Origin: Euprymna scolopes
Lineage: Eukaryota
DNA length: 64,000 nucleotides
Strand: one strand, 5' to 3'
Assembly: GCA_053919585.1 (NCBI GenBank)
Contig: CM132803.1
In this document: one piece after another, positions 1,627 through 62,363 of the stretch
Numbering within the stretch: the first letter of the stretch is position 1
Layout: every line of letters starts with the position of its first letter
Notes under the pieces: model-generated
The model's input: the letters and a program-made list of their open reading frames with translations, nothing else
Database searches by the model: none
Told to the model about the DNA's origin: nothing
Program-made: the position numbers and the translations under genes

Positions 1627-4026
1627 ATGCTGAAGATGTTTCTGAAAACTTGCATTAACTTCTACATCTTACACCTTTGTGTGTGTATGGATCTCACTTA
1701 CTATGTGGAAGAAGGGAAAAGTCCAGGTACTTACCTGGGAGATGTTGCTACTGACTCTCTTGTCTTGAAGGACATATCACCTCAAGATGCTCATCAAATT
1801 AGTTTTGGTCTTTTGCAAAAAGGTGCCACTGGCAGTTCACCATTATTCCGAATCTCTGAGAAATCTAGCAAACTCTACACTGCCCAAACATTAGATGCTG
1901 AATCACTTTGCCTTTTCAATAAAGAATGCTTTCAAATGGTTGACGTAGCAGTGAGGAAAGGAACCACTGTTTTCAAATTGTTAGAAATCAAAGTTATCAT
2001 TAAAGATATCAATGATCATCAACCAGAATTCCTTGAAAAACAAGCAACTCTTAAGTTTAGTGAAGATGACCGAAAAGGGGCCAGAAGATCAATTCCAAAT
2101 GCGATTGACAAAGATGTTGGAATTATTAATTCTAAAATAACCTATGAGCTTATAAAACATAGTCAACAATCTTTTTCTTTGTTTGTATCTAAAAGTGTTG
2201 ATGGTGAATCAAAATTGAGTATAATTTTAGAAAAACCTCTTGATAGAGAAGTAAAAGACTCTTATATGCTTCAAGTGATTGCAAAAGATGGAGGTTCTCC
2301 ACCTAAAGAAAGTGTTTTAAATGTTGACGTTATTGTCACAGATGTTAATGACAATATTCCTGTTTTCTCACAGAAGGTTTACAATGTCTCAATTCAACAT
2401 AATCATGAAGAAATTAAACCTGTTACTGTATTGTCTGCTACAGATTTGGATTCTGGAATTAATGGCCGAATATATTACCATACAAATATGAAAACAAATG
2501 AAATGACAAGAAATGCTTTTAAATTAAATGAACAAACAGGTGAAATATTTCTAAATAATAAAGTTACTTTAAGAAAAGATTTGATTTATGAATTGTATGT
2601 TGAAGCTTCAGATGGGGGGAAACCTCCCTTGAGTGCATTGGCAAAAGTTTTCATAAATGTGATAAATGAACAAAATAATGCCCCAATTATTGATGTAAAT
2701 TTTTTCTCAACATCAAAGGAAAACACAGTTGATGTTTCTGAAAATATAAAAGTTGGTAGTTTCATTGCTTATGTGAAAGTAAGTGATGAGGATGCTGGTC
2801 AGAATGGAGAGGTGAACTGTGAAATAAAACATGATAAATTTCAATTGCAAAACATGGGAACCAAGAAATACCAAGTTATAGTGAAAACTCTTTTAGACAG
2901 GGAAACTGAAGATCATCACAGTATAATTATCAAATGTCAAGACAAAGGATCTCCTCCTCTTCAAAGCAAAAGGACATTTTCTGTACATGTGATTGATGTT
3001 AATGATGTAGAACCAGTGTTTTCTAAACAATTATTTAAATTCTTCATTGATGAAAACCAAAGATCGAAAATTCCTATTGGCACAATCAATGCCACAGATC
3101 CAGACTTGGGACTTGGAGGTAAACTGTCTTTTTCTTTAGTGAGCACCAATAAACAATTTGTACCATTTCGAATCACTGAAAATGGATTAATCTCTTCAAT
3201 TATGTCTTTAGACCATGAGTTTCAAGATACTTATAATTTTGAAGTGTTTGTAAAAGACAAAGGAAGTCCATCATTGAATAACACAGTGAATGTGATTGTT
3301 AAGGTGAGAGATGAAAATGATAATGCTCCATATTTCACATTTCCCAGTGTTAATCCTTATAATATGGATGTAACATATTACCCGCATCATACAAAGAACA
3401 TCAGCCAGATAAAGGCATCAGACAGTGACAGTCAAGAGAATGCATTTCTAAAATATGAAATAATCAGAGGCAATAGCAAACAGATATTCAGCATCAACCA
3501 GTACACTGGTTTGTTATGTTCAACTCATGTCCTAAGCCAACAAGATGCTGGCTCATATGAGCTGGAGTTTCTAGTGAAGGACAGTGGTAGCCCAGTTCTA
3601 TCAGCCAGAACTACTGTATATTTGACACTGACCGTAAGCAACAAGACATCAGAAATGTTAAATGCTGTTAACATCAAAAAAGATAACAAGATCCACCTGA
3701 CTTCAGCAATTATCATTGTGTCTGTAGCAGTGACAATAGCTGTGATCATTACAGCTTCAATCTCAGTGTGTATCCTTCGCTGTTGCAATCCTCGAAGCGT
3801 TCCAGTAGCAGAAGGTGGATATGTGAGTAGTGGTCAGAGACATTTAATAAGTCCTCCTTACCCAGCCAATCCTTGGTCTAATGTTGCTCTTCCTACAAGT
3901 GATGCAGTTGATATGAGAAGAAGCAGTCAACCACCAACACCCAGAATGCAAACCCATCCTTACGCTCAACAGATGTTACCATCACAAGCATCAAAATCAC
4001 AAGCACCTGCAGACTCTGTTTCACAG
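1627..4026 (+). CDS. Protocadherin gene 1, large exon (signal peptide, EC1-EC6, TM, proximal cytoplasmic tail)
   Basis: Cadherin motifs DINDHQP, LDRE, DVNDN, AxDxDxG, DxGxP; hydrophobic TM AIIIVSVAVTIAVIITASISVCIL; phase-0 donor CAG|GTGAGT. Spliced product ~950 aa. Confidence 0.95.
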
Positions 4027-4152
4027 GTGAGTGGAATATCCATTATTATTTTACATATATTTATTTACATTTTTATTTGTATTAATTTGTAAATGATTAT
4101 CATGATTTTTCTCATTGTTTTAATTTGATTCATGTTTTACTATTCTATTTAG

Positions 4153-4315
4153 ATGTATATTCAAGATGTGGCATTGCCATCTGGTAGTGACAGAAGTCAG
4201 AAAAAAGTTGGCAGAATGCAAAACTATTCTAGTAGAAATTCTATAAAATCTTCACATAATGATGACAGACAACGTTGGAATGATAGAAACCCAGGACTAA
4301 TTGAAGGCATGACAG
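4153..4315 (+). CDS. Protocadherin gene 1, cytoplasmic exon A (MYIQDVALPSG...)
   Basis: TTTAG acceptor, ACAG|GTGAG donor, 163 nt open in frame, homologous exon in all paralogs. Not in the ORF track. Confidence 0.9.
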
Positions 4316-6239
4316 GTGAGTTATGAGAGAAAACTGTTTCTATATACTTGTAACCAGACAGGAAGGTTGTTTTTGTCACAATCCTGCTTCATGAGATCAA
4401 CTAGTGTAACTAGGCTGTTTCCAGTCCCTAAACCCAGGGACCCTTCAAAATGTAACCAGACACTTACTTGTGACTGGAACTACCACTCTGATGCTCATAG
4501 CGCACAAAACTTGCACAACCCTAAGTCTGTGTGGCAATACTCTAAACTCGTGGGTTGGCTGTCTGTTGTCAGATGCTGTGGTTGAGTTTTGGCTTCTCTT
4601 AGTTGTAGTTTAGTATCAGGTTCTGTAAATAACTGTGTTTTCAAATCAAAACCATTCAATAATCAATGATAACTCAGAGATCATTTTCTTATAAAAGAGA
4701 ATAATTATTCATAAATATTTCAGGGTACACTTTGTGCAAAGGAAAGTCAGATTTTTGGGGTTCTTAACAATTTCAAGATGCAGGATTTTTAACTTGTTCA
4801 GACAGCTTCTCGATAGGAGGATGGAAAAAAATGCTTTTTCCACTTAGCTCTTTGGGGGAGATATCCAGCCCTGTGCAGGAGCCCAAAGCTGAAGTGTACT
4901 CTTCGATGGCCAGCACACAAGTTATCTGCCAAAATTAAACGGTTTTATCAATTTGTCGTTTCCCTTTCTTTCTAGGCCAGATTACCATTTCTTCCTCCGT
5001 CATTTGGAGATTACCATTTCTCCCTCTGATCTCTTTTTTCTTTCTCTTTCTTAAACCCCTTTTTCTCTTTCCCTCTCTTCTCCTTTGTTCTAAAGAAAGT
5101 TTATTATTATAGCAAAACTTTCTGTTAGGAGGTGGGGGTCCCTCACTTGATACAAGCCATATGATAATCATATATAAGTTCTGTGTTGCATAATATTTCA
5201 AGAAAATTTTCCTTTATCAGGTGTGTTTGACATAGTTATTTATGGTTTGTTTTCATATAAATCAACACTTGTAATAAAAACTTGGTAAGTGGTATATTTT
5301 AGAATAAATTCAAAGACTACTAAAATAGTTTTTTTTAAATGTTCTCTGCTTATTTAATTTAGCATTTATTTTATAGATTTCCTATTTATAAATTATAAAA
5401 ATTTGGATATATTATTGAGTTGATTAACGTTTCTTTCCCCTAGATTAAACTATCCCTCAATTTTGGAATTGGGTTATAAAAAAAACCTTTTTTTAATCAT
5501 TTTAATAAACCATCATTTGTAAATAACTAATTAAGTTATCCATTTGTTTACAAAATTTCTATCTATGACTTTTATTCTTTCACTGAATATTTATCACCTA
5601 CCCGCTTTTATTCTATACGTCATCTATGACTCACTTCTGTACAATGCTTTCTCTCTGTTTATTAACAATTGATGATAAAAAATGAAAGATTGAAATATGA
5701 ACAAAAGGAAATGTCACCACAAATAGCAATCCTATTTCTTATAATTGGAAAAGAAAAGTAGCAGAGTTATAACATGTAGAAAGAAGCTAATTTTCAGATT
5801 TTAAACTTTTATTTTTTATATCCAACTAGCTTTGTAAACAAATGTTTTCCCCCTGATTCAAACAATTTAACCTAAACTCAATGGGTTATCTCATAGAAAA
5901 GAAAGACCTCATAATTCTATGCTAATTTGCTAATCAAAGAATGGATATGAATATATATTTATACATATAATACAAAATTCATATTTATTCTTGATTTTGG
6001 ATATTGCTCCCAGACATTTTATAATTTGTAATACATTTCAGTTATTTGCTAACTTTAAACCTGAGCAAGTATAATAATCACCAGTTGCATAAATAAAACA
6101 TAATGTTCCTTTGAAAGTAATCATAATCTTTATTTAAATGTAACAAAACTTTGCAAACAGTTTACAATAGCTCAGTGTCTGGGCTTAAATTCATATAGAA
6201 CCCAATTTTAGTTTAATAAGTAGAGCTTATTCCTACATT

Positions 6240-8048: not shown

Positions 8049-8590
8049 GAAATATACATGGTCGAATTTTTATTCATATTTCTTCCTTTGGTTATATAAC
8101 AGTTTATATATTATATATACATGATTATTATAATTTTTAAAAGAATGATTTAATTTGAAATTTTTAATATATTTATCAGCATTGATTAATATTTTTCAAT
8201 CATAATCTTTTTTTGTACGTTTGCTTTAAACTGTTGTAACTAAATATTTCTGATTTGACCTCAACATTTTTATGTCAATAATATATATATTATCAATTCA
8301 GAATTAAAAATGTTTTTTTGAAAAGTTGTGTCATTTTTTGGAAACGTTGTTATTCTTAAGTTTTTCAAAGATGAATGAATAAGTATTAGTTTTCTTGTGT
8401 ATGACACTGTGATCAATTTAAAATTAAATTATTTGTTAGCAAGAAATATACCTGAATATCACCTTTTTCAAATAAGTCTCACCATGTTGTCAGAAACTGT
8501 ATGACTTTAGTAGATATTGATAATATTAAGTAAGTTTTAAAATTGATGTTTCCCAACATGAAATTAATGATGCTGCTACTTTTTTTTCAG

Positions 8591-8880
8591 ATATATACCC
8601 TGCCCAATATTGTAATCCTCCTCCTTCACAAATTAATCAACGCCATACAACAGAGACAAGACCCTTAGGACAGACTGTCAGCTACCCCAGTGATACAACA
8701 ATAGTAGCAAGAGGTTTCTACACACCCTACATGAATGAAAACAGTCCTCATGCAGATGCAAAGTCTGACTCTGGTGGTGAAAACAATAGTTTATCTAGTA
8801 GACAGTTACAATCAAGAAATATATCTGCAAGTGGTAGCCAGTCTTCAATCAACAGACCACTACCACCTGTACCATGCTAA
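8591..8880 (+). CDS. Protocadherin gene 1, terminal cytoplasmic exon B (DIYPAQYCNPPP...RPLPPVPC*)
   Basis: Poly-T CAG acceptor, phase 1, open to TAA at 8878-8880, homologous in all paralogs. Not in the ORF track. Confidence 0.9.
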
Positions 8881-9751
8881 AAGTAATCCCTAACAATACA
8901 TATATCTTTAAACAAAATTCTTAGTATTTTCAAAATTAATTGAAAGTTAATTTTTTTAACCTAAACGTGATTAAATGTTTTTAGATAAAAGCTTATAACT
9001 TTTTTGCATACTTATTAAAATTACATATTTCTTATTTATTCAAATGTTTCTTTCTATTGTTAAGCATTATACAACATTTTTGTTGTTCTGCCATTATTTA
9101 CCTTTGTTTTGTTTAATTAGTAATTAAAATAAATGCTTATAATTTATTTTCGTTTACTAAATTTATTTATAAATTTAAAAAGAATTTAATTGGTACATAC
9201 ATACATATAAAAAAAACTTTCCATCTTTAAATTTAAGTTTGAGGAAATATGGCTTTTAATTCTATGTATTTGATAATAAAAAATGAATAATCCTAACCAA
9301 CTGATGGCTTGTAAAATCATATTCAAATATAGATTCTATAATTTTCTTTTCATTATTTATTTATTATTTGAGCACAAAATGGAAATAAAAATGTAATACA
9401 ATAATAATAAACTAAATTAATTGAAATTGAAATCAGTATCACAATGCAATAAAAAGTATATACATCGTCTATTTTTTGTAGAATTTGTGATAAAAACAAC
9501 ATGCCAGAAAATGATAGAAAGAAAGGAGTAGATTATGAGGGATGAATAGCATAATTTCCAAAGCATTTTTACATTTATTTTTCTTCTTTAATTAGTTTTG
9601 ATTTAATTTAATATTGACACTGATTTTTATTTATTTTTATCAAAATAATGCACATTTTTATATATAAATAAATAAATAATTAAAATTAAAATCTGTTGTT
9701 TTGGTTTCGTAGATAATAATGCCTTGCTCTATTCTCTAAAAAGTGTTTATA

Positions 9752-17431: not shown

Positions 17432-18213
17432 GTAATTTTTTTTTTTTCAAATCTATTTTTTTATTCAATTATTTTTCTTGTATTAGCAGTTAAATTCATA
17501 AAATTATTTATTAGCGTTTTTCACAGAATATCTCATTAAAATTATCTCCCTTTTGCTGTGCTGGTTTATGTACTGTCACAAACTATATCAGAAAAAGTTG
17601 ATATTTTTGCTGATTTGAATTAGAATGTGAGAAAATGATATTGTTTAAAAAAAAGTGTTTATTAAATTTGAAAAGTATAGAAAAGATGATTTCTCATCTC
17701 CTCTTTTTATTGTATTTTCCTCAGTTTTATTCACACATGTGCACAAAACTGTTATATATATAAATTGCTATTTCTTTTTATTGCATCTTGAAATCATCAT
17801 ATACACAAACAAAATACTAATATTTCATAACAGTTTGATTTATGAAGGCTATAGAAATCGAAAAATTAAAAATAAATTCATATTAATGCTATTTATTTTG
17901 TATCAAAAATTCAGTTATTCTGTATACAAATGAAATCAAAATGAACAAGTTAAAAACAAAATCTTGATAATCAACTGTAGATTTGTTTACTAAGCAACTC
18001 ATGTTGATTTAGAGAAAAGTATAAGATTATATTTTTATGCAACTTAAATATTTACACCATTTATTTTATTACAAGTCTCTGTACATGAATGCATATATGT
18101 ATTTATATCTATATGTTAAGTATTACTTGCAGGAAAAAAAATAACCATTTCTTTGTTTTATTCTCTTAACAATAATATTATTTGATTGCTTATTTTATTT
18201 TCTGATTTGTCAG

Positions 18214-18503
18214 ATATATATCCTTCACAATATTGCAATCCTCCTCCATCACACGATGACCATCAGCGATCAACAGAGATACGGTCTTTGGGACAAACTG
18301 TCAGTTATCCCAGTGATACCACAATAGTAGCCAGAGGCTTTTATACCCCTTACATGAATGAACATAGCCCACACACAGAAACAAAGGCTTTCTCAAGTGC
18401 TGAAAATAGAAGCTCTTCCAGTAGACTTTCACAATCAAGAAATGTGCCTACAAGTGGAAGCCAGTCTTCCATCAACAGACCATTGCCTCCTGTACCTCAT
18501 TAA
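18214..18503 (+). CDS. Protocadherin gene 2, terminal exon B
   Basis: CAG acceptor; DIYPSQYCNPPP...RPLPPVPH*. Confidence 0.9.
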
Positions 18504-20190: not shown

Positions 20191-22581
20191 ATGATAGTCA
20201 AAATTTGTATCATTTTATCTTTTGTAAATATTTGTTTGTGTGTGGACCTCACTTACTATGTGGAAGAAGGAAAAAATTCTGGTAATTACCTGGGAGATGT
20301 TGCTGCTGACTCTCTTGTGATGAAGGACATATCATCTCAAAATTATCACCAAATTAGTTTTAGTCTTTTACAAAAAGGTGCAACTGGCAGTTCACCATTA
20401 TTCCGAATTTCTGAAAAATCTGGCAAACTGTACACTGCCCAAACATTAGATGCTGAATCACTTTGCTTTTTCAATAAGGAATGCTTTCAGATGGTTGATG
20501 TGGCAGTCAGGAAAGAAACAGCTGTTTTCAAATTGTTAGAAATTAAAGTCATCATTAAAGATATCAATGATCATCAGCCTGAATTTCCTGAGAAAAAGGT
20601 TGACATAAAATTTGATGAAGGCTACAAAAAAGATGCCAAAGTATTAATACCTAGTGCTTTTGACAAAGATGTTGGGATTATTAATTCTAAGATAACATAC
20701 GAGCTTGAAAAACAAAGCAATGAACCTTTTTCTTTGTTTGTATCTAAAAGTGTTGATGGTTCTTTAAGATTGAGTATCAATTTAGAAGGCCCTCTTGACA
20801 GAGAAATCAAAGATAATTACATGATCAAAGTCATTGCTAAAGATGGAGGCTTACCAACAAAACAAAGTGCTTTAAATGTTCACATCACAGTAACAGATGA
20901 TAATGATAATTTCCCAATTTTCTCACAGAAAGTTTACAATGTCTCAATCCAACATAATCATGAAGAAGTAAAACCTGTTACTGTATTGTCTGCTACAGAT
21001 TTGGATTTGGGAAAAAATGGAAAAATTTTATATCACATCAGTGTGAAAACAAATGAAATGACAAGAAATGCCTTTAAATTGAATGAAAAAACTGGAGAAA
21101 TATTCCTTAAAAAGAAAATCACTTTGAGAAAAGATATAATGTATGAATTATATGTTGAAGCATCGGATGAAGGTAGTCCACCATTAAGTTCATTATCAAT
21201 GGTTTTAATAAATGTGATAAATGAACAAAATAATGCTCCAATTATTGATGTAAACTTCTTCTCAACATCAAAGGAAAATACAGTTGATGTTTCTGAAAAT
21301 ATAAAAGTTGGTAGTTTCATTGCTTATGTGAAAGTAAATGATGAGGATGCTGGTCAGAATGGAGAGGTGAACTGTGAAATAAAACATGATAAATTTCAAT
21401 TGCAAAACATGGGAACCAAGAAATACCAAGTGATAGTGAAAACTCTTTTAGACAGGGAAACTGAAGATCATCACAGTATAATTATCAAATGTCAAGACAA
21501 AGGATCTCCTCCTCTTCAAAGCAAAAGGACATTTTCTGTACATGTGATTGATGTTAATGATGTAGAACCAGTGTTTTCTAAACAATTATTTAAATTCTTC
21601 ATTGATGAAAACCAGAGATCGAAAATTCCTATTGGCACAATCAATGCCACAGATCCAGACTTGGGACTTGGAGGTAAACTGTCTTTTTCTTTAGTGAGCA
21701 CCAATAAACAATTTGTACCATTTCGAATCACTGAAAATGGATTAATCTCTTCAATTATGTCTTTAGACCATGAGTTTCAAGATACTTATAATTTTGAAGT
21801 GTTTGTAAAAGACAAAGGAAGTCCATCATTGAATAACACTGTGAATGTGATTATTAAGGTGAGAGATGAAAATGATAATGCTCCATATTTCACATTTCCC
21901 AGTGTTAATCCTTATAATATGGATGTAACATATTACCCGCATCATACAAAGAACATCAGCCAGATAAAGGCATCAGACAGTGACAGTCAAGAGAATGCAT
22001 TTCTAAAATATGAAATAATCAGAGGCAATAGCAAACAGATATTCAGCATCAATCAGTACACTGGTTTGTTATGTTCAACTCATGTCCTAAGCCAACAAGA
22101 TGCTGGCTCATATGAGCTGGAGTTTCTAGTGAAGGACAGTGGTAGTCCAGTTCTATCAGCGAGAACTACTGTATATTTGACACTGACCGTAAGCAACAAG
22201 ACATCAGACATGTTAAATGCTGTTAACATCAAAAAAGATAACAAGATCCACCTGACTTCAGCAATTATCATTGTGTCTGTAGCAGTGACAATAGCTGTGA
22301 TCATTACAGCTTCAATCTCAGTGTGTATTCTTCGCTGTTGCAATCCTCGAAGTGTTCCAGTAGCAGAAGGCGGATATGTGAGTAGTGGTCAGAGACATTT
22401 AATAAGTCCTCCTTACCCAGCAAATCCTTGGTCTAATGTTGCTCTTCCTACAAATGATGCAGTTGATATGAGAAGAAGCAGTCAACCACCAACACCCAGA
22501 ATGCAAACACATCCTTACGCTCAACAAATGTTACCATCTCAAGCCTCAAAACTACAACCGCCTGCAGACTCTGTTTCACAG
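20191..22581 (+). CDS. Protocadherin gene 3, large exon
   Basis: Signal peptide, six EC repeats, TM; donor CAG|GTAAGT. Confidence 0.95.
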
Positions 22582-22814
22582 GTAAGTGAAATATTTCATA
22601 ATATTGCACATTGATTTGCATTTTTTGATTAGTACGGTTTTGTAAATGATTTTTATTCAAATGTATTTTATTTAAAATTTTAAAATTTTTCTAATATTTA
22701 AAAAAATTTTTTAGCTTATTTTTCAATTTTGACTTTATATTATGTTTTTCTCATTACATATACACATGATTTACCTTTGATTGTTATTTATTCATGCTTT
22801 ACTATTCTATTTAG

Positions 22815-22974
22815 ATGTATATTCAAGATGTGGCATTGCCATCTGGTGTTGACAGGAATCAGAAAAAAAATGGCAGAATGCAAAACTATTCCAATAAAAA
22901 TTCTATAAAATCTCACAATAATGACAGACAAGATTGGAATGATAGAAACACAAGACCATTAGAAGGGATAACAG
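22815..22974 (+). CDS. Protocadherin gene 3, cytoplasmic exon A
   Basis: TTTAG|ATGTATATTCAAG, donor ACAG|GTGAGT, 160 nt. Confidence 0.9.
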
Positions 22975-25900
22975 GTGAGTCTTTAAAGTTGTTTCTATAT
23001 ATTCTAAATTTTTACATCAAATATTTAGCCTTGTTTTGTTGAATTTTTGATACTTATAATAAATACAACATTGAATATATTTAATTTATTCTTTAAGGAT
23101 TAATTGAAATACTTGATCTTACAACGAAATAATTATTATGATAGAATCTTCTAGTCTCTATAATTGTGATTTAAACCCTATTTTATATTTCAATTTAATT
23201 TAACACTTTTAAAATAATGCATTTCTATTTATTGGAAATTAATAGAAAAGTTTGGATCTTTTTGTCTAATTTCTATACAGTAAACACATTGCATTTTCCT
23301 GGTGTTTCTTGAGTAGAGACATGTTACTTGATATTGGATCTAGAAAAATTAGTTAAAAATATAGTCATTTTTTAAATAGAGTTTTTAAACAATCATTTTA
23401 GTTTTTATTTATTTTGTTTTTGGATTTAAATAATTTTTTGACTAATCATAAATAATAGAATAATTAAATATTATTTATCGAAGTCACGCAGGCAAAAACA
23501 GATCTTATTTTATATTTTTTATTAATATTGAGATTATTCCTGTTCATCAATGATAGTAAAATATTTAAATGATTATAAAGAGATTTTTCACATCTGACAA
23601 ATGTGTGTATATGCTGAGACAGTAAAGTATAGATACTGTTATAATTCCATGGAACGCTTTATAGTAACAAGACTTGTTTAACTTTGTCCTTGTAAGGAGA
23701 CATGCAATAGGGCTTTACATGAACAACTGTTCTAAGGGGAATAAGTAGGCATTCCTTGCAATAAAATGGATAGAAAACCACGAGGAAAGCTAAATCAACA
23801 AATAGCAAGCATTTATTATGCCAAAAATACAATTATAATGTCTAAATCACTTTTTGTCAGAATGAGCCAGAATTAAATTGAATTGCTGATCGAATTTCGA
23901 AGATAAAAGTTCACGAAATTAATATAAACGATCCTTTACAACGAAAATTAGAATATTAAATTAAGAGTTATTATGATCATTGATTATTTAAAATTGGAAT
24001 ATTAAAGTTTATTTTAACCATTTGGAAATTATCATTACTATTTATTTATTAAATTTTGGTTTTAAAAGGGTATAAAACATGGAATTTATGCCAGTAGAAA
24101 AAGTCTTTTTCACTTCATTGCTGTTTTAGTTTCGACACATATCTTAAGATCATTAACTGAATTTACAGCTGATAAAATGTGATATTTACTTGCACCCTTT
24201 TTGTTTAAAGTAGTAAATCTTCTTTTCCATCATATATAATTTCTGTATCATTTGGGTCTCTTTACTCTGACTCCTTTAAAATCATTAGCTAAATTTACAA
24301 TCGATAAAATTGTTCAACGCTTCTGGTGGAAGGTATGGCATGAGTTTGTTCAACCATTTTGGTGAATGGGGTAATATTTTTGTTGATTTTGATGTGTATT
24401 CATAACAATTTCCCTCCAATGTGTTGGCATGAGTTTCTTGTCCTCGTACATGGCAGAGGCAACCTTTTTTAAGATATTCTCACATGCATAGGATCTCCAA
24501 GGAAACTTCTTTTAAGTATCACAATCAACTTTCTGTCATTTGATTATCTAGTCCATCTCTTACTTCTCAAAAATGTATAGCTGGCTTTTTGAGTTGCCTT
24601 CCCCTCCTATTTGGAAAATTTAGCTCTTATATTTGAACTGTCAGTTTGTCACATATTTTAATCTTAACAGAAGGAAACATGCGTTACCCCCCTCCCTATT
24701 ATAATGTTTACATTTGTAGGGCAAAATATGTGAATATAACAATACAGAGCAAAGATAATTTCAAATAATATTTTAAAAGTGTATGAAGAACTTTATTGAA
24801 TGTTATTTTCATATTTTGAGGGTTGGTTTTATTTGTTTCAGATGTTTTATAAGAACCCTAAAGACTTTATTTCTAAATTCAGGTTTTTAAATATTAAAAT
24901 ATGGATTTTAAGTTTCCACTAATATTCATTCCTTTTTTAAGACTGTAAATTATTGTTCCAGTCCTCATAAGTTGACATTTTTAATAACATTTCTATTTGG
25001 ATCTTATCAATTATTTTTTTTTTTTACTTGTAGCGATCATGTTAACTTTAGCTTTTAGCAGATGAAAACAGATATTTCTGATTTGCCTTGTACTATTAGT
25101 TTTAATTTGAGAAAGTGTTAGAAACATTTTTTTATAAGATATTAATTTAGAAATGATCACTACTATTGTGACTAAAAGTCTTGTTAAATTTGAAATGTAG
25201 AATAGTTTGACTTCATTTTAATGTCGGAAGTGCAATACTTTATCTTGAAATAGAATGTAACATTTTTCTATGAATAGAAATTGTTTTTTTTAACTTTATT
25301 TCTTTATTCTACATCTTTTTGTTGTAAATATTATTTTCGTTTAAGTTATTGAAATTAGTAGTTAATATATAAATATGTTATTCAGATAAGCTGCATAAGA
25401 TCTCATAAGCTGATTGATTAATGTTTGATAATCTTTTTTCTTTAATTTTTTTTTATTGCCAATTCACTCCAAATAAGGCACAGAGCCACTTAGTTGTGGA
25501 GGGCTACTATTTGGGACCAGATTTACAGGGATACTATTTAGGGAGTTGAGCAGTGAGATATTTGTTTACAATACACTTGAATTTCTGCTTGTTAGTAGAG
25601 TCAGGAAAGCAGGGGTTCAGGAGGGAATTCCAAAGTGCAGTAGTCCAAGGAAAAAAGCTATTCAATTAGAAGGTTTTACAGCATCAACGGACTTCTACAA
25701 TGTAGGGGTGGGATTTTGCTGCCTGTCAGGTTTGTTGAAGGTATTGTCGTTGAGGGGGTACTAGTGCTTTGAGTTTGTCAGAGCACTTGCCATTGAAATA
25801 CTTGTAAAAGATGCCATGTTTCAGCGATGGGACAGAGGTTGGAGTTTAGTTGATAGTTCAGGACCTATTAGATTAGCGACTCTTTTTTGAACCCTGTCAA

Positions 25901-31190: not shown

Positions 31191-31332
31191 NNNNNNNNNN
31201 NNNNNNNNNNNNNNNNNNNNNNNNNNNNNNNNNNNNNNNNNNNNNNNNNNNNNNNNNNNNNNNNNNNNNNNNNNNNNNNNNNNNNNNNNNNNNNNNNNNN
31301 NNNNNNNNNNNNNNNNNNNNNNNNNNNNNNNN
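31191..31332. other. Assembly gap (142 N)
   Basis: Run of N within gene 3 intron 3. Confidence 1.
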
Positions 31333-31445
31333 GTCCACTTTTCCATTTTACTTTTTCTACATAATCTTTATTACATAAGAATTGACATGTTCTCAGGTAT
31401 AAAATTAATAATGTTGTAACGATTTTTATTTATTTATTTTTTTAG

Positions 31446-31735
31446 ATATATACCCTTCCCAATATTGTAATCCACCTCCTTCACAAATTGATCAACGTCG
31501 TACAACAGAGACAAGACCCTTAGGACAGACTGTCAGCTACCCCAGTGATACAACAATAGTAGCAAGAGGTTTCTACACATCCTACATGAATGAAAACAGT
31601 CCTCATGCAGATGCAAAGTCTGACTCTGGTGGTGAAAACAATAGTCTATCTAGTAGACAGTTACAATCAAGAAATATATCTGCAAGTGGTAGCCAGTCCT
31701 CAATCAATCGACCACTTCCTGCATTACCTCATTAG
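31446..31735 (+). CDS. Protocadherin gene 3, terminal exon B
   Basis: TTTAG acceptor; DIYPSQYCNPPP...RPLPALPH* (TAG 31733-31735). Linkage to gene 3 crosses the N gap. Not in the ORF track. Confidence 0.85.
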
Positions 31736-33961: not shown

Positions 33962-36361
33962 ATGATGCTTCCCCAAATATTTGTTGTTTTCTATCTATTA
34001 AAGATTTGCTTATGTGTTGATCTCACTTACAATGTGGAAGAAGGCAAAAGTCCAAATACATATGTGGGAGACATTGCTGCAGATTCGCATGTCATGAATG
34101 ATATTTCAACTGAAGATCATAACTTGATTAGTTTTGGTCTCTTACAAAAAGGTGCTTCTGGCTCATCTCCATTGTTCAAGATCTCCAAAAAGTCTGGGAA
34201 ATTATACACAGCTCAAACTTTAGATGCTGAATCACTTTGTTTTTTTAAAAAACAGTGTTTTCAGATGGTAGATGTGGCTGTTAGAAAAGCAACAACCGTG
34301 TTCAAATTATTAGAAATCAAAATAATTATAAATGATATAAATGACCATCAGCCAGAGTTTTCTGATAAACTCATCAAAGTTGACTTTGAAGAAAATGATA
34401 GTAAGGGAACAAAAAAATCAATTCCGAATGCAATTGACAAGGATGTTGGTATTGTTGATTCTCAGATTACTTATGAATTAAAAAAAGAGAAAGAGGAACC
34501 TTTTTCTTTGTTTGTATCTAAAAGTGTTGATGGAACATCAAAGCTAAATTTAGTATTAGAAAAATCTCTTGATCGTGAAGTGAAAGACTCTTATATGATT
34601 CAAGTGATTGCCAAAGATGGTGGTTCTCCACCTAAACAAAGTTCTTTAAATGTTCACATCACAGTCACAGACGTCAATGACAATATACCTATATTCACGC
34701 AGAAAATATACAATGTTTCCATACATCATGATCACGAAGACATAAAACCTGTTACGGTATTATCTGCCACAGATTTAGACGCTGGAATTAATGGCCGAAT
34801 ATATTACCATACAAATATGAAAACAAATGAAATGACGAGAAATGCCTTTAAATTAAATGAACAAACAGGTGAAATATTTTTGAATAAGAAAGTTGCTTTA
34901 AGAAAAGATTTGGTTTATGAGTTGTATGTTGAAGCTTCAGATGGGGGGAAACCTCCCTTGAGTGCATTGGCAAAAGTTTTAATAAATGTGATAAATGAAC
35001 AAAATAATGCTCCAATTATTGATGTAAACTTCTTCTCAACATCAAAGGAAAATACTGTTGATGTTTCTGAAAATATAAAAGTTGGTAGTTTCATTGCTTA
35101 TGTGAAAGTAAGTGATGAGGATGCTGGTCAAAATGGAGAGGTGAACTGTGAAATAAAACATGATAAATTTCAATTGCAAAACATGGGAACCAAGAAATAC
35201 CAAGTGATAGTGAAAACTCTTTTAGACAGGGAAACTGAAGATCATCACAGTATAATTATCAAATGTCAAGACAAAGGATCTCCTCCTCTTCAAAGCAAAA
35301 GGACATTTTCTGTACATGTGATTGATGTTAATGATGTAGAACCAGTGTTTTCTAAACAATTATTTAAATTCTTCATTGATGAAAACCAGAGATCGAAAAT
35401 TCCTATTGGCACAATCAATGCCACAGATCCAGACTTGGGACTTGGAGGTAAACTGTCTTTTTCTTTAGTGAGCACCAATAAACAATTTGTACCATTTCGA
35501 ATCACTGAAAATGGATTAATCTCTTCAATTATGTCTTTAGACCATGAGTTTCAAGATACTTATAATTTTGAAGTGTTTGTAAAAGACAAAGGAAGTCCAT
35601 CATTGAATAACACAGTGAATGTGATTGTTAAGGTGAGAGATGAAAATGATAATGCTCCATATTTCACATTTCCCAGTGTTAATCCTTATAATATGGATGT
35701 AACATATTACCCGCATCATACAAAGAACATCAGCCAGATAAAGGCATCAGACAGTGACAGTCAAGAGAATGCATTTCTAAAATATGAAATAATCAGAGGC
35801 AATAGCAAACAGATATTCAGCATCAACCAGTACACTGGTTTGTTATGTTCAACTCATGTCCTAAGCCAACAAGATGCTGGCTCATATGAGCTGGAGTTTC
35901 TAGTGAAGGACAGTGGTAGTCCAGTTCTATCAGCCAGAACTACTGTATATTTGACACTGACCGTAAGCAACAAGACATCAGAAATGCTAAATGCTGTTAA
36001 CATCAAAAAAGATAACAAGATCCACCTGACTTCAGCAATTATCATTGTGTCTGTAGCAGTGACAATAGCTGTGATCATTACAGCTTCAATCTCAGTGTGT
36101 ATCCTTCGCTGTTGCAATCCTCGAAGTGTTCCAGTAGCAGAAGGCGGATATGTGAGTAGTGGTCAGAGACATTTGATAAGTCCTCCTTACCCAGCCAATC
36201 CTTGGTCTAATGTTGCTCTTCCTACAAGTGATGCAGTTGATATGAGAAGAAGCAGTCAACCACCAACACCAAGAATGCAAACCCATCCTTACTCAAGTGC
36301 TCACCATATGCTCTCCCCTCAAGCACAAAAACCAGAACAAACTTCAGACTCTGTTTCACAG
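33962..36361 (+). CDS. Protocadherin gene 4, large exon
   Basis: Acceptor TTTCAG at 33921, first in-frame ATG 33962, six EC repeats plus TM, donor CAG|GTAAGT. Confidence 0.94.
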
Positions 36362-36717
36362 GTAAGTTTGTACATTTTGTTTTAACAGAGAAATTGTTTT
36401 AAACGTACATAGATGCATAGAATAATCTTTTAAATGTATAATTGTACTTATTAATTACTTTTGTGTCACATATTTTTAAACATCTTTTAAAATTACCATG
36501 TGAAAACTTTGAATAATTAATAACATCAACTTGTCGACCTAATATACATTTAATTTCATGTGTACAATTTTGCATTATCAAATTAATGTTTTATTATGAA
36601 CGATTAATACCTATAAAACTCATCAATAAAGCTTTATAATTTTCAGTTGTTACAAAATGTAAATATGTTCAGTTTAATTAGAGATATTAAAATATTTTTA
36701 TGTCTTATTTGTGATAG

Positions 36718-42577: not shown

Positions 42578-44992
42578 ATGTTTCCTCTAAAGAAGCTGCT
42601 GAAAAATATATGCATAATATTTATTATCATACACATCGGATTGTGCATAGATATTACTTACTATGTTGAAGAAGGAAGACAACCAGGTACATATGTAGGT
42701 GATGTTGCAAATGATTCACAAATGATGAAGGATATCCCGGATTCTGACCACAATCGAATTGAATTTAAGCTTCTTCATAAAGGAGCTACTGGCAATTCCC
42801 CAATATTTAAAATATCAAAAAGAACTGGAAAACTATACACTGCACAAACATTAGATGCAGAATCACTTTGTCATTTTGAAAAAGAATGTTTTCAAACGAT
42901 AAATATAGCAGTTAAAAAATCAACAACTGTTTTCAAGTTATTAGAAATCAAAGTAATAATACAGGACATAAATGATCATCAGCCAGAGTTTCCGGATAAA
43001 CAAATTACTATAGAATTTGAAGAAGGAAATGGTAAAGGTATGAAAAGATCAATTCCAAATGCCATAGACAAAGATGTAGGAATCACTAATTCACAAATTA
43101 CTTATGAACTAAAAAAGACCAAAGATGAACCTTTCATATTATCTACAATGAAAAAAGTTGATGGAACATCTGATCTAAGTATAGAATTAGAAAGAATGTT
43201 AAACAGAGAAAACAAGGATTCTTATACAATTGAAGTAATTGCAAAAGATGGAGGATCCCCACCAAAACAAAGTGTATTGACTGTTCACATTTCAATCACA
43301 GATGTAAATGATAATAAACCAATATTTTCTAAAAAGGTTTATAATGTTTCTATTGACAGCAAACACAATGAAGCCAAACCAGTTGTCATATTATCTGCTA
43401 AAGATTTAGATTCTGGAGAAAATGGCAAAGTAAAATATCATATTACGGCAAAAACAACTGAAAGCACAAGAAAGATATTTGATTTAAATGAAATTACTGG
43501 AGAATTATTTCTACATAAAAAAGACATATTAAATAAAAAAGTGATATATAAGTTATATGTGGAAGCTAGAGATGGGGGTAATCCACCTCTACGATCATTA
43601 GCAATGGTTTTTGTAAATGTTATTAACCAGCAAAATAAAGCTCCATTAATAGACGTAAACTTTTTCTCTACATCCAGAGAAAACACAGTTGATATTTCTG
43701 AGGACATAAAAGTTGGTAGTTTCATTGCTTATGTAAAAGTAAGTGATGAGGATGCTGGTCAGAATGGAGAGGTGAACTGTGAAATAAAACATGATAAATT
43801 TCAGCTTCAGAAGATGGGAATCCTTAAATATCAAGTAATTGTAAAAAGTCATTTAGATCGTGAAAGAGAAGAACAACATGATATTATAATAATGTGTCAA
43901 GACAAAGGATCTCCTCCATTAAAAACTAAAAGCAAGTTCTCAGTTCAAGTGTTGGATGTTAACGATGTAGAACCAGTGTTTTCTAAACAATTATTTAAAT
44001 TCTTCATTGATGAAAACCAGAGATCGAAAATTCCTATTGGCACAATCAATGCCACAGATCCAGACTTGGGACTTGGAGGTAAACTGTCTTTTTCTTTAGT
44101 GAGCACCAATAAACAATTTGTACCATTTCGAATCACTGAAAATGGATTAATCTCTTCAATTATGTCTTTAGACCATGAGTTTCAAGATACTTATAATTTT
44201 GAAGTGTTTGTAAAAGACAAAGGAAGTCCATCATTGAATAACACAGTGAATGTGATTGTTAAGGTGAGAGATGAAAATGATAATGCTCCATATTTCACAT
44301 TTCCCAGTGTTAATCCTTATAATATGGATGTAACATATTACCCGCATCATACAAAGAACATCAGCCAGATAAAGGCATCAGACAGTGACAGTCAAGAGAA
44401 TGCATTTCTAAAATATGAAATAATCAGAGGCAATAGCAAACAGATATTCAGCATCAACCAGTACACTGGTTTGTTATGTTCAACTCATGTCCTAAGCCAA
44501 CAAGATGCTGGCTCATATGAGCTGGAGTTTCTAGTGAAGGACAGTGGTAGCCCAGTTCTATCAGCCAGAACTACTGTATATTTGACATTGACCATAAGCA
44601 ACAAGACATCAGAAATGCTAAATGCTGTTAACATAAAAAAAGATAACAAGATCCACCTGACTTCAGCAATTATCATTGTGTCTGTAGCAGTGACAATAGC
44701 TGTGATCATTACAGCTTCAATCTCAGTGTGTATCCTTCGCTGTTGCAATCCTCGAAGTGTTCCAGTAGCAGAAGGCGGATATGTGAGTAGTGGTCAGAGA
44801 CATTTGATAAGTCCTCCTTACCCAGCCAATCCTTGGTCTAATGTTGCTCTTCCTACAAGTGATGCAGTTGATATGAGAAGAAGCAATCAACCACCAACAC
44901 CCAGAATGCAAACCCATCCTTACTCAAGTGCTCAACAAATGCTGTCATCACAAGCATCAAAGCCACAACCTATTCACGATTCTGTATCTCAA
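42578..44992 (+). CDS. Protocadherin gene 5, large exon
   Basis: Acceptor TTTCAG at 42547, six EC repeats plus TM, donor CAA|GTAAGT. Confidence 0.94.
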
Positions 44993-59966: not shown

Positions 59967-62363
59967 ATGCTGAAGATTATAGGTTTAATATGTATAATGA
60001 TACATATTGGACTCTGCATAGATAAAACTTACCATGTGGAAGAGGGACGACAACCAGGTACTTATGTGGGTGATGTTGCAAGTGATTCACAAGTGATGAA
60101 GGATATTCCTGATTCTGACCACAGCCTCATTGAATTCAGTCTTCTTCATAAAGGAGCTACTGGCAATTCCCCATTATTTAAAATATCAAAAAGAACTGGA
60201 AAACTTTACACTGCACAAACATTAGATGCAGAATCACTTTGTCATTTTGAAAAGGAATGTTTTCAAATGGTGAATATAGCAGTAAGGAAATCAACAACTG
60301 TTTTCAAGCTATTAGAAATCAAAGTAATAATACAAGACATCAATGATCATCAGCCAGAGTTTCCGGATAAACAAGTTAATGTGAAATTGGATGAAAATGT
60401 ATTAATTGGCACAAAAGTTTCAATTCCAAATGCTATAGACAAAGACATAGGTATTATTAATTCACAAATTACTTATGAACTAAAGAAGACAAAAGATGAT
60501 CCATTCATATTGTCTACAATGAAGAAAGTTGATGGAACATCTGATCTGAGTATAGAATCAGAAGGACTACTCAACAGGGAGATCAAAGAAACTTATTCAG
60601 TTCAAGTAATTGCAAAAGATGGAGGATCCCCACCAAAACAAAGTGCATTAACTGTTCACATTTCAATCACAGATGTAAATGATAATACACCATTATTTTC
60701 TAAAAAGGTTTATAATGTTTCTATTGACAGCAAACACAATGAAGCCAAACCAGTTGTCATATTATCTGCTAAAGATTTAGATTCTGGAGAAAATGGCAAA
60801 GTAAAATATCATATTACGGCTAAAACAACTGAAAGCACAAGAAAGATATTCGACTTAAATGAAATTACTGGAGAATTATTTCTACATAAGAAAGATACAA
60901 TAAATAAGGAAATGATATACAATTTGTATGTAGAAGCAAAAGATGGTGGGAATCCACCTCTACGATCATTAGCAAAGGTTATTGTAATGATGATGAACCA
61001 GCAGAATAAAGCTCCATTAATAGATGTAAACTTTTTCTCTACATCCAGAGAAAACACAGTTGATATTTCTGAGGACATAAAAGTTGGTAGTTTCATTGCT
61101 TATGTGAAAGTAAGTGATGAGGATGCTGGTCAGAATGGAGAGGTGAACTGTGAAATTAAACATGATAAATTTCAGCTTCAGAAGATGGGAATCCTTAAAT
61201 ATCAAGTAATTGTAAAAAGTCCTTTAGATCGTGAAAGAGAAGAGCATCATGATATTATCATCATGTGTCAAGATAAAGGATCTCCTCCTTTGAAAAGTAA
61301 AAGCAAGTTCTCTGTTAAAGTGATGGATGTTAACGATGTAGAACCAGTGTTTTCTAAACAATTATTTAAATTCTTCATTGATGAAAACCAGAGATCAAAA
61401 ATTCCTATTGGCACAATCAATGCCACAGATCCAGACTTGGGACTTGGAGGTAAACTGTCTTTTTCTTTAGTGAGCACCAATAAACAATTTGTACCATTTC
61501 GAATCACTGAAAATGGATTAATCTCTTCAATTATGTCTTTAGACCATGAGTTTCAAGATACTTATAATTTTGAAGTGTTTGTAAAAGACAAAGGAAGTCC
61601 ATCATTGAATAACACAGTGAATGTGATTGTTAAGGTGAGAGATGAAAATGATAATGCTCCATATTTCACATTTCCCAGTGTTAATCCTTATAATATGGAT
61701 GTAACATATTACCCGCATCATACAAAGAATATCAGCCAGATAAAGGCATCAGACAGTGACAGTCAAGAGAATGCATTTCTAAAATATGAAATAATCAGAG
61801 GCAATAGCAAACAGATATTCAGCATCAACCAGTACACTGGTTTGTTATGTTCAACTCATGTCCTAAGCCAACAAGATGCTGGCTCATATGAGCTGGAGTT
61901 TCTAGTGAAGGACAGTGGTAGCCCAGTTCTATCAGCCAGAACTACTGTATATTTGACACTGACCGTAAGCAACAAGACATCAGAAATGTTAAATGCTGTT
62001 AACATCAAAAAAGATAACAAGATCCACCTGACTTCAGCAATTATCATTGTGTCTGTAGCAGTGACAATAGCTGTGATCATTACAGCTTCAATCTCAGTGT
62101 GTATCCTTCGCTGTTGCAATCCTCGAAGTGTTCCAGTAGCAGAAAGCGGATATGTGAGTAGTGGTCAGAGACATTTGATAAGTCCTCCTTACCCAGCAAA
62201 TCCTTGGTCTAATGTTGCTCTTCCTACAAGTGATGCAGTTGATATGAGAAGAAGCAGTCAACCACCAACACCCAGAATGCAAACCCATCCTTACTCAAGT
62301 GCTCAACAAATGCTGTCATCACAAACATCAAAGCCACAACCTATTCACGATTCTGCATCTCAA
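59967..62363 (+). CDS. Protocadherin gene 7, large exon
   Basis: Acceptor TTTCAG at 59921, first in-frame ATG 59967, six EC repeats plus TM, donor CAA|GTAAGT. Confidence 0.94.

What the first reader, a model, noticed from the sequence alone, without database searches (positions are those of the whole stretch)
2363..3040. EC3-EC4 are mosaics: gene 1 switches from gene 3-like to gene 4-like within EC3, and genes 1/3/4 share one EC4
Seen: gene 1 ~2363-2452 matches gene 3 ~20918-21007 better than gene 4, whereas ~2452-2650 matches gene 4 ~34782-34980 (GINGRIYYHTNMK...DGGKPPLSALAKV) better than gene 3. EC4 is essentially identical in genes 1, 3 and 4 (2653-3040, 21208-21595, 34982-35369). The sub-tract IKVGSFIAYVKV(S/N)DEDAGQNGEVNCEIKHDKFQLQ is also shared with genes 5 and 7. 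Genes 2 and 6 share other features (QQSTYELYV, NNPPxIKVxFVSTS, QPQFSKQ). Inference: short conversion tracts shuffle sub-domain cassettes and create new recognition combinations.
Basis: partly seen in the sequence, partly recalled or inferred. Interest (0 to 1): 0.7.

Follow-up and report, generated by a model that had tools for sequence, protein, structure and literature searches.

The report
Patchwork protocadherin genes made by copying
Neighbouring nerve-cell adhesion (protocadherin) genes of a squid- or cuttlefish-like animal have copied short stretches of their third and fourth outer domains into one another, so that gene 1 is a real patchwork; this is a known kind of evolution, newly resolved here at sub-domain scale.

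Summary
The window holds 7 of at least 30 tandem, same-strand protocadherin genes of a 5.9-Gb animal genome, inferred to be a decapodiform cephalopod. In 2363-2452 gene 1 differs from gene 3 at 4 sites and from gene 4 at 20. In 2453-2652 it differs from gene 4 at 8 sites and from gene 3 at about 50. EC4 (2653-3040) differs at 7-8 of 388 sites among genes 1, 3 and 4.

Synonymous divergence (dS) switches about tenfold at the breakpoints. A 3SEQ-type exact test, a PHI test, an unguided breakpoint scan (best at 2440-2470) and AU tests all reject a single tree.

A wider view changes the details. Gene 1's closest relative in EC1-EC3a is a paralog outside the window (uA2, about 16 kb upstream). uA2 itself carries gene 3's version of the second half of EC3. 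Orthologs in a related species place gene 1's 2453-2520 inside the gene 4 lineage, so gene 1 is the recipient there.

The most likely mechanism is non-allelic gene conversion with tracts of roughly 100-800 bp, on top of an array-wide homogenised 3' block. The claim of new recognition combinations is untested. The motifs shared by genes 2 and 6 are not conversion. Other agents of this scan noted similar conversion banding elsewhere in this genome.

The parts
1627..4026 (+). Gene 1 large exon. It encodes the signal peptide, EC1-EC6, the transmembrane helix and the proximal tail. ATG at 1627; splice donor CAG|GTGAGT after 4026.
   Evidence: ORF. Pfam Cadherin_2 plus five Cadherin repeats, E 4.8e-76. 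Donor read. PDB protocadherin 6vg1 at E 8e-87.
1627..2452 (+). Gene 1 EC1, EC2 and EC3a. Family-A background; the nearest relative is the out-of-window paralog uA2 (G000:C21 about 25.2199 Mb).
   Evidence: 86-100% identity to uA2 in 90-bp windows, mostly above 90%. (uA2,g1) bootstrap 92 in the EC1 and EC2 trees. Only g1 and uA2 also align upstream of the ATG.
2363..2452 (+). EC3a: the first 30 codons of EC3, up to the DLD calcium motif. Within the window it is gene 3-like.
   Evidence: 4 differences from g3 against 20 from g4. dS is 0.17 for g1-g3 and 3.0 for g1-g4.
2453..2652 (+). EC3b cassette, version X. It covers strands C to G of EC3 (residues 276-342) and is gene 4-like in gene 1.
   Evidence: 8 differences from g4 against about 50 from g3 and uA2. 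(g1,g4) bootstrap 99. ((g1,g4)99,sP3)90 with the other species' gene 4 ortholog for 2453-2520. Strand positions come from the AF2 model.
2653..3040 (+). EC4, nearly identical in genes 1, 3 and 4 and in uA1 and uA2. From 2725 it is also shared with three downstream paralogs (L006-L008).
   Evidence: dS 0.01-0.10 among the five genes. Difference lists. EC4 clusters by species.
2746..2843 (+). 98-bp sub-tract inside EC4 (IKVGSFIAYVKV...DKFQLQ), shared with genes 5 and 7 and with L011.
   Evidence: One difference each in 98 bp, with dense differences on both sides.
3040..3963 (+). Array-wide homogenised block covering EC5, EC6, the transmembrane helix and the proximal tail. It is the context for the mosaic, not the finding itself.
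   Evidence: 97-100% mean pairwise identity among 30 paralogs spread over 600 kb. 90-92% between species and a single clade per species.
20918..21595 (+). Gene 3 counterpart of 2363-3040. Positions 21008-21207 are EC3b version Y, shared with uA2.
   Evidence: for coordinates. uA2 and g3 differ at only 2 sites over g1-equivalent 2484-3284.
34694..35369 (+). Gene 4 counterpart of 2365-3040. Positions 34782-34981 are EC3b version X, the likely donor lineage.
   Evidence: for coordinates. (g4,sP3) bootstrap 100 in EC1-EC2, and g1 nested with them in 2453-2520.
43706..43803 (+). Gene 5 copy of the 98-bp EC4 sub-tract.
   Evidence: Offset (g1 2374-3040 matches 43334-44000 at equal length). Differences.
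61077..61174 (+). Gene 7 copy of the 98-bp EC4 sub-tract.
   Evidence: Offset (g1 2374-3040 matches 60705-61371 at equal length). Differences.

Best explanation
The seven ORFs are the large exons of complete, separately spliced protocadherin genes. They lie in a tandem array of a cephalopod-type genome. Non-allelic (interlocus) gene conversion between misaligned paralogs repeatedly copies stretches of roughly 100-800 bp from one gene into another.

Its effect grows towards the 3' end:
- EC5 to the proximal tail is the same in every gene of the array.
- EC4 is the same within sub-families.
- The second two-thirds of EC3 (2453-2652) exists among five related genes in two versions. X is in g1, g4 and partly uA1. 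Y is in g3 and uA2. Their distribution contradicts the EC1-EC2 genealogy.

Gene 1 is therefore a patchwork of four parts:
1. A promoter-proximal flank and EC1-EC3a like its sister uA2.
2. An EC3b copied from the gene 4 lineage.
3. A common EC4-to-tail part.
4. A variable exon end and downstream exons of the family-A type, closest to gene 3.

Shown: the mosaic, its significance, exchange at synonymous sites, events younger than the species split, and gene 1 as recipient for 2453-2520.

Inferred: the molecular mechanism (conversion rather than double crossover), and any effect on binding specificity.
For: - Difference lists and the variable-site table.
- Nearest-paralog scan.
- Exact 3SEQ-type p = 5.5e-8, 3.8e-22 and 8.5e-23. 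At least 26 of 30 genes stay significant after Bonferroni correction over 24,360 triplets.
- Conflicting segment trees.
- AU rejection, for example the EC3b alignment against the EC1 tree: log-likelihood difference 122.7, p 1.9e-6.
- The unguided breakpoint scan is best at 2440-2470.
- Separate against shared topology at equal parameter number: 70 and 142 log-likelihood units.
- dS switches at the breakpoints.
- PHI z = -13.5 to -19.5.
- GC3 rises from 0.17-0.25 in EC1-EC4 to 0.28-0.34 in the homogenised block, as expected under GC-biased conversion and as reported for fugu (PMC1852091).
- The gene 4-like patch in gene 1 is internal. Upstream only uA2 aligns with g1. Downstream g1 aligns with g3, uA1 and uA2 but not with g4. 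Gene 1's terminal exon is 95.8% like g3's and 74% like g4's.
- Orthologs in a related species keep EC1-EC2 orthology ((g4,sP3) bootstrap 100), while EC4 and the block cluster by species.
- Tract dS of 0.07-0.13 is below the between-species dS of 0.32-0.8.
- The related species has its own EC3 mosaic with a different breakpoint.
Against: - No reads or population data were available, so no exchange event was seen directly.
- The 3' ends of the tracts cannot be placed, because EC4 and the block are homogenised anyway. A double crossover or a chain of unequal crossovers is therefore not formally excluded.
- The direction of transfer is supported only for 2453-2520. For 2521-2652 the other species' copies are themselves converted.
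- The AU tests used trees chosen from the same data.
- The GC3 gradient could partly reflect codon usage in the membrane and tail parts.
Confidence: 0.85

Rival explanations
1. Unequal crossing-over. The mosaic genes are hybrids made when misaligned paralogs recombined once inside the exon, so each takes its 5' part from one parent and its 3' part from another.
For: The array shows duplication of two-gene units: g6-g7 resembles L024-L011, and uA2 with its neighbour resembles g1-g2. Gene 4 looks like a simple two-part hybrid, with its own lineage up to 2452 and family-A-like sequence afterwards.
Against: In gene 1 the gene 4-like piece is internal. The flank and exons downstream are family-A-like, and g4 does not align beyond the exon end. 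The 98-bp tract 2746-2843 shared with genes 5 and 7 is bounded on both sides by 25-30% divergence. A single crossover cannot produce internal patches.
Confidence: 0.07
2. Old islands only. Nothing was moved. Conversion homogenises everything except a few protected recognition stretches, and EC3b is simply such an old, unconverted island in each gene.
For: Gene 3 does look banded against family A, with dS of 0.33 in EC1, 0.85 in EC2, 0.17 in EC3a, 1.25 in EC3b and 0.07 in EC4. Other agents of this scan describe such banding nearby.
Against: An old island would differ from all paralogs. Gene 1's EC3b is instead nearly identical to gene 4's (dS 0.13) while the adjoining EC3a has dS 3.0. uA2's EC3b equals gene 3's (dS 0.07) although uA2 is gene 1's sister elsewhere. 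Gene 1's 2453-2520 nests inside the gene 4/sP3 lineage. The variable stretch itself has moved.
Confidence: 0.05
3. Assembly artefact. Reads from different paralogs were joined wrongly in a repetitive array.
For: All paralogs share a 0.9-kb near-identical block, which invites misjoins. No reads could be inspected.
Against: - The junctions at 2362/2363 and 2452/2453 lie in diverged sequence, not inside the identical block.
- The g1-g4 tract has 8 private differences in 200 bp, so it is not a pasted copy.
- Breakpoints are shared by whole sub-families that have since diverged: 2725 in L006-L008, and 2746-2843 in g5, g7 and L011.
- An independent assembly of another species shows the same kind of mosaic.
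Confidence: 0.02
4. Convergent selection. Similar protein segments evolved independently because of shared function.
For: Several shared motifs are calcium-binding or structural and are conserved in all paralogs.
Against: The similarity holds at synonymous sites. dS falls about tenfold inside the tracts, which selection on the protein cannot produce.
Confidence: 0.01

Closest known systems
Regional gene conversion in teleost clustered protocadherin variable exons (fugu, Yu et al. 2007, PMC1852091; zebrafish, Noonan et al. 2004 as cited there)
   Same: A tandem array in which the 3' part of each large exon is more than 99% identical among paralogs, synonymous sites included, and the 5' part is divergent. 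The boundary is discrete, in EC4 or EC5, and differs between sub-clusters. GC3 is raised in the converted part, and homogenisation is lineage-specific. All of these are seen here.
   Different: The expansion here is independent and invertebrate, and consists of complete multi-exon genes rather than variable exons spliced to shared constant exons (PMC9068888). Exchange here also reaches into EC3 and moves the variable stretch itself. In vertebrates EC1-EC3 (fugu) or EC2-EC3 (Xenopus and mouse, PMC4978886) are reported as not, or rarely, converted.
Cephalopod protocadherin arrays (Albertin et al. 2022, PMC9068888; Styfhals et al. 2019, PMC6339937)
   Same: Multi-megabase arrays of same-strand, multi-exon PCDH genes on one chromosome. 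[quoted passage not shown]
   Different: In the passages found, those papers infer conversion only from species-specific clustering of whole genes. I found no domain-resolved breakpoints, tract lengths, donor and recipient polarity or sub-domain mosaics in them. The library search is limited, and Albertin et al. 2015 and Noonan et al. 2004 were not held.
Solved delta-2 and clustered protocadherin ectodomains (PDB 6vg1, 6vg4, 6e6b, 5szn)
   Same: EC1-EC4 of gene 1 aligns over its whole length at E 8e-87 to 1e-71. The six-repeat architecture is the same.
   Different: No cephalopod structure or binding assay is known to me. Whether the antiparallel EC1-EC4 dimer of vertebrates applies here was not shown (one search gave no verdict).

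Membership tests
Protocadherin (six-repeat, delta-2/clustered-like) | N-terminal Cadherin_2 domain followed by five cadherin repeats, six EC in all | tested here: met
   Pfam PF08266 plus five stretches of PF00028 in all seven proteins, E about 1e-76. The AF2 model shows six beta-sandwich repeats.
Protocadherin (six-repeat, delta-2/clustered-like) | Full-length sequence similarity of EC1-EC4 to solved protocadherins | tested here: met
   6vg1 at E 8e-87, PCDH10 (6vg4) at 3.5e-79, gamma-B4 (6e6b) at 3.7e-73.
Protocadherin (six-repeat, delta-2/clustered-like) | Homophilic antiparallel EC1-EC4 trans dimer | tested here: inconclusive
   The complex prediction of two copies of residues 22-465 gave no verdict, score 0.03.
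Interlocus gene conversion / concerted evolution in a tandem array | Near identity at synonymous sites in some segments beside high dS in adjoining segments | tested here: met
   g1-g4 dS is 3.0 in EC3a and 0.13 in EC3b. g1-uA2 dS is 0.09-0.36 elsewhere but 1.00 in EC3b.
Interlocus gene conversion / concerted evolution in a tandem array | Significant breakpoints and conflicting trees between segments | tested here: met
Interlocus gene conversion / concerted evolution in a tandem array | Paralogs cluster by species in converted parts and by orthology in unconverted parts | tested here: met
   In the EC1-EC2 tree (g4,sP3) has bootstrap 100 and (g2,L026) groups with (s812,s816) at 100. In the EC4 and block trees the other species' genes form their own clade at 100.
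Interlocus gene conversion / concerted evolution in a tandem array | Raised GC3 in converted regions (GC-biased conversion) | tested here: met
   GC3 is 0.17-0.25 in EC1-EC4, 0.28 in EC5 and 0.335 in EC6, transmembrane helix and tail. This is suggestive only, because it is confounded by region.
Interlocus gene conversion / concerted evolution in a tandem array | Internal patches bounded on both sides, as opposed to single-crossover hybrids | tested here: met
   2746-2843 is bounded on both sides. Gene 1's gene 4-like patch lies between family-A-like 5' sequence and family-A-like downstream exons.
Interlocus gene conversion / concerted evolution in a tandem array | Direct observation of conversion (polymorphic tracts, pedigrees, reads) | not testable with these tools
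   No reads or population data were available.
Vertebrate-type clustered protocadherin locus (variable exons plus shared constant exons) | Many variable first exons spliced to one shared set of constant exons | tested here: not met
   Each gene has its own small exon about 125 bp downstream and its own terminal exon. This agrees with PMC9068888.

The most novel reading that the evidence does not exclude
Conversion in this array is not only a homogenising force. It also acts as a germline generator of new adhesion specificities. By moving the variable C-to-G-strand part of EC3 between genes that keep different EC1-EC2, it produces new EC2/EC3 pairings that selection retains. This would be an invertebrate, convergent counterpart of cassette-based diversification, working in the very domains that vertebrate protocadherins shield from conversion.
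Probability: 0.2. Interest if true: 0.75.

Novelty: new member of a known kind. Interest (0 to 1): 0.5.

Why it matters
Cephalopods and vertebrates enlarged their protocadherin repertoires independently, and both have large brains. This region shows that the cephalopod array evolves under the same regime as fish clusters. The membrane-near half is kept constant by copying, and the outer half stays variable.

There is one difference. Copying sometimes carries part of a presumed recognition domain (EC3) from one gene into another.

This yields natural domain-swap pairs. Gene 1 and its sister uA2 differ at 36 residues of the mature ectodomain, and 17 of them lie in the swapped EC3 piece. Such pairs make it directly testable whether cephalopod protocadherins recognise themselves through EC2 and EC3 as vertebrate ones do.

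It also warns that whole-gene trees of these families mix several histories.

Tried and rejected
- The complex prediction of two copies of gene 1 EC1-EC4 (residues 22-465) gave no verdict (score 0.03, controls not run). It is no evidence either way, and no interface was returned, so the tracts could not be mapped onto a dimer.
- The AF2 model of the whole large-exon product is moderate (mean pLDDT 68, pTM 0.47). I used it only to place the beta-strands of EC3 and EC4.
- The papers by Noonan et al. 2004 (PMC353213) and Albertin et al. 2015 (PMC4795812) are not held. Their content is cited only through other papers.
- I checked the idea that the breakpoints sit inside perfectly conserved calcium-motif stretches. 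g1 and g4 still differ at 6 sites in 2416-2452, so I do not claim a homology-anchor rule. The breakpoints scatter over about 2452-2528 in the two species.
- I considered that the 98-bp tract 2746-2843 is a conserved regulatory DNA element inside the exon. It is not shared by genes 2 and 6 or by the upstream sub-array, so conversion is the better reading.
- A first tree run failed on a thread setting, and a first joint alignment timed out. Both were repeated successfully.
- The species was not identified. The best named hits are Acanthosepion pharaonis protocadherins at about 63% identity, and the best unnamed hits (85%) come from ENA assembly ERZ21867824.
Full report
**What is in the window.** Seven ORFs of 807-853 codons lie head to tail on the + strand. 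Each has a Cadherin_2 domain and five Cadherin repeats. EC1-EC4 aligns over its whole length with solved delta-2 and clustered protocadherins, for example 6vg1 at E 8e-87.

The large exon of gene 1 ends at a consensus donor, CAG|GTGAGT, after 4026. Each gene has its own small exon about 125 bp further on and its own terminal exon. These are therefore complete genes, not variable exons with shared constant exons. That matches the description of cephalopod arrays in PMC9068888.

The window is G000:C21:25234001-25298000 of a 5.9-Gb assembly. At least 40 related copies lie on the same contig, and I retrieved 30 full large exons (L001-L030) spanning 24.77-25.36 Mb. The closest named proteins are from the cuttlefish Acanthosepion pharaonis, at about 63% identity. 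Closer unnamed ones, up to 85%, come from ENA assembly ERZ21867824. I take the genome to be a decapodiform cephalopod. This is an inference. Nothing suggests human sequence.

**The observation.**
- g1 and g3 differ densely up to 2362, at only 4 sites in 2363-2452, densely again in 2453-2652, and at 7 sites in 2653-3040.
- g1 and g4 differ densely up to 2452 (20 sites in 2363-2452). After that they differ at 8 sites in 2453-2651 and about 8 in EC4.
- The tract shared with genes 5 and 7 is 2746-2843, with one difference each between flanks 25-30% diverged.
- The motifs shared by genes 2 and 6 exist in the proteins. Their DNA, however, is only 64-75% identical with no identical run above 17 bp.

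**Is it more than chance or selection?**
- dS changes about tenfold at the breakpoints. For g1-g4 it is 1.73, 0.73 and 3.0 in EC1, EC2 and EC3a, then 0.13 and 0.10 in EC3b and EC4. For g1-g3 it is 0.17 in EC3a and 1.25 in EC3b. Selection on the protein cannot do this.
- A 3SEQ-type exact test gives p = 5.5e-8 for g1 as child of g3 and g4, with the inserted tract at 2453-2646.
- PHI tests give z = -13.5 (five genes) to -19.5 (30 genes), with no permutation as low.
- Maximum-likelihood trees by segment conflict. (uA2,g1) has bootstrap 92 in EC1 and in EC2, but EC3b gives (g1,g4) at 99 and (uA2,g3) at 93.
- Each segment rejects the other segments' trees in AU tests. The EC3b alignment against the EC1 tree gives a log-likelihood difference of 122.7, p 1.9e-6.
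- A single-breakpoint scan that used no prior coordinates is best at 2440-2470, with AICc lower by 489.
- With branch lengths unlinked in both models, so that the parameter number is equal, separate topologies beat a shared one by 70 (two parts) and 142 (five parts) log-likelihood units. Rate differences alone do not explain the signal.

**What the wider array adds.** Two close relatives lie just upstream of the window: uA1 (L003) and uA2 (L004).
- uA2 is gene 1's sister. It is mostly above 90% identical through 1690-2452, dipping to 86% near 2140-2229. It is the only paralog that also aligns upstream of the ATG.
- In 2459-2652, however, uA2 is only 76-84% like gene 1 and is almost identical to gene 3. 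uA2 and g3 differ at two sites over g1-equivalent 2484-3284.
- The tests are correspondingly stronger: g1 as child of uA2 and g4 gives p = 3.8e-22, and uA2 as child of g1 and g3 gives p = 8.5e-23.
- EC3b therefore comes in two versions. X is in g1, g4 and the later part of uA1. Y is in g3, uA2 and the first 30 bp of uA1. Their distribution contradicts the EC1-EC2 genealogy, and at least two exchanges are needed.
- Gene 1 and uA2 differ at 36 residues of the mature ectodomain, and 17 of them lie in EC3b.

A map of 60-bp identity classes for all 30 genes shows the same behaviour across the array.
- L006-L008 are like genes 5 and 7 up to about 2718 and like family A from 2725 (p about 1e-34).
- Gene 5 is itself a mosaic of gene 7-like and L007-like parts.
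- At least 26 of the 30 genes keep a significant triplet signal after Bonferroni correction. That scan tested only the six best-ranked parent pairs per gene, so it is a lower bound and not exhaustive.

**Direction and age.** A 237.5-kb contig of a related species (ENA ERZ21867824) carries the orthologous array in the same order: sP1 resembles gene 1 and the uA genes, s812 gene 2, sP4 gene 3 and sP3 gene 4.
- In EC1-EC2 the genes pair by orthology: (g4,sP3) at 100, and (g2,L026) with (s812,s816) at 100.
- In EC4 and in the 3' block they cluster by species at 100. This is the classical signature of concerted evolution.
- For 2453-2520 the tree is ((g1,g4)99,sP3)90. Gene 1's piece lies inside the gene 4 lineage, so gene 1 is the recipient there (protein view).
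- For 2521-2652 the direction is open, because the other species' copies have themselves been converted.
- Tract dS (0.07-0.13) is well below between-species dS (0.32-0.38 in the block, 0.4-0.8 in orthologous EC1-EC2). The exchanges are therefore younger than the species split.
- The other species has its own EC3 mosaic with a different junction. sP4 is sP1-like in 2363-2520 and sP3-like in 2528-2754, p = 2e-4.

**Mechanism.** I favour non-allelic gene conversion, for four reasons.
- The patches are internal. 2746-2843 is bounded on both sides.
- Gene 1's gene 4-like piece sits between a uA2-like 5' part and family-A-type downstream sequence. Gene 1's terminal exon is 95.8% like gene 3's and 74% like gene 4's, and g4 does not align past the exon end.
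- Tract sizes of about 100 to 800 bp fit conversion.
- GC3 rises from 0.17-0.25 in EC1-EC4 to 0.28-0.34 in the homogenised block. The same was used as evidence for conversion in fugu, although region-specific codon usage confounds it.

Unequal crossing-over surely built the array. Two-gene units recur, and it may explain simple two-part hybrids such as gene 4. It cannot make internal patches.

Misassembly is unlikely, for three reasons.
- The junctions lie in diverged sequence.
- The g1-g4 tract carries 8 private differences.
- Sub-families that have since diverged share the same breakpoints, and an independent assembly shows the same kind of mosaic.

It could not be excluded with reads.

**Structure and function.** In the AF2 model (mean pLDDT 68), EC3a (residues 246-275) covers strand A and the stretch up to the DLD calcium motif. 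EC3b (276-342) covers strands C to G. The 98-bp tract covers strands B to D of EC4.

Whether these residues contact a partner is unknown. The homodimer prediction gave no verdict. It rests on vertebrate work in which EC2 and EC3 determine specificity (summarised in PMC4978886).

**Comparison with what is known.** Regional gene conversion that homogenises the 3' part of protocadherin variable exons is well described in teleosts. It shows discrete boundaries in EC4 or EC5 that differ between sub-clusters (PMC1852091), and it occurs at lower levels in other vertebrates. For cephalopods, homogenisation by conversion has been suggested from tree shape.

This region is a new, independent instance of that kind, resolved to sub-domain scale. 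It differs in two ways. The genes are complete genes, and exchange enters EC3, which vertebrate studies describe as spared.

Other agents of this scan have reported conversion banding and a conversion-resistant loop at the start of EC2 in neighbouring windows of this genome. My data agree with the latter in passing: g1-uA1 differences crowd at 2019-2088 and g1-uA2 differences at 2153-2207. These notes are not independent evidence.

**Verdict.** The conversion reading is supported, and the functional reading is untested. I class it as a new member of a known kind, of moderate interest. Its main value is the natural EC3-swap gene pairs it provides for testing cephalopod protocadherin recognition.

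Noticed in passing
window 3040-3963, and the same stretch in L001-L030: A block of about 0.92 kb (EC5, EC6, transmembrane helix, proximal tail) is 97-100% identical in DNA among 30 paralogs spread over 600 kb. It is only 90-92% identical to the related species' genes, which are homogenised among themselves. The block stops about 63 bp before the exon's splice donor.
   Followed up: partly
window 4152-4316, with copies after each of the seven large exons (for example 22794-23001 and 36695-36905): A small exon of about 165 bp (acceptor AG|ATGTATATTCAAGAT, donor CAG|GTGAGT) follows each large exon by about 125 bp. It is 69-83% conserved among the seven genes, while the intron around it is not alignable.
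   Followed up: partly
window 8582-8882; copies at 18206-18496, 31437-31719, 40427-40689, 49125-49403 and 57805-58107: Each gene has its own terminal coding exon, ending ...RPLPPVP and then a stop. Gene 1's is 95.8% like gene 3's but only 73-78% like the others, so this exon is not homogenised across the array.
   Followed up: partly
L023 (G000:C21 about 25.3552 Mb), g1-equivalent 2341-2360: This paralog has a 20-bp deletion in the EC2-EC3 linker coding sequence that shifts the frame. Its longest ORF is 578 codons. It is probably a pseudogene, or possibly a local assembly error.
   Followed up: partly
window 1690-3960 (all 30 paralogs): Third-position GC content rises along the exon: EC2 0.17, EC3 0.20, EC4 0.24, EC5 0.28, and EC6 with the transmembrane helix and tail 0.335. 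This parallels the intensity of homogenisation.
   Followed up: yes
G000:C21 25.19-25.36 Mb (window genes plus L003, L004, L006-L008, L011, L023, L024, L026): Gene types are interleaved in a way that suggests tandem duplication of two-gene units. g6-g7 resembles L024-L011 with a period of about 17.6 kb. uA2 and its neighbour resemble g1-g2 with a period of about 16.5 kb.
   Followed up: no
L031-L033 (ENA ERZ21867824, contig ctg118819l, 152-208 kb): A related species carries the orthologous array in the same gene order. It has its own EC3 mosaic: sP4 is sP1-like in g1-equivalent 2363-2520 and sP3-like in 2528-2754. Its 3' block is less tightly homogenised (94-97%).
   Followed up: partly
window 2019-2088 and 2153-2207: Differences between otherwise very similar family-A paralogs are crowded into short patches in the first half of EC2. 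g1-uA1 differences crowd at 2019-2088, at the start of EC2. g1-uA2 differences crowd at 2153-2207, further into EC2. No close donor was found among the 30 genes.
   Followed up: no
window 31191-31332: There is a run of 142 N between genes 3 and 4. It was left untouched.
   Followed up: no
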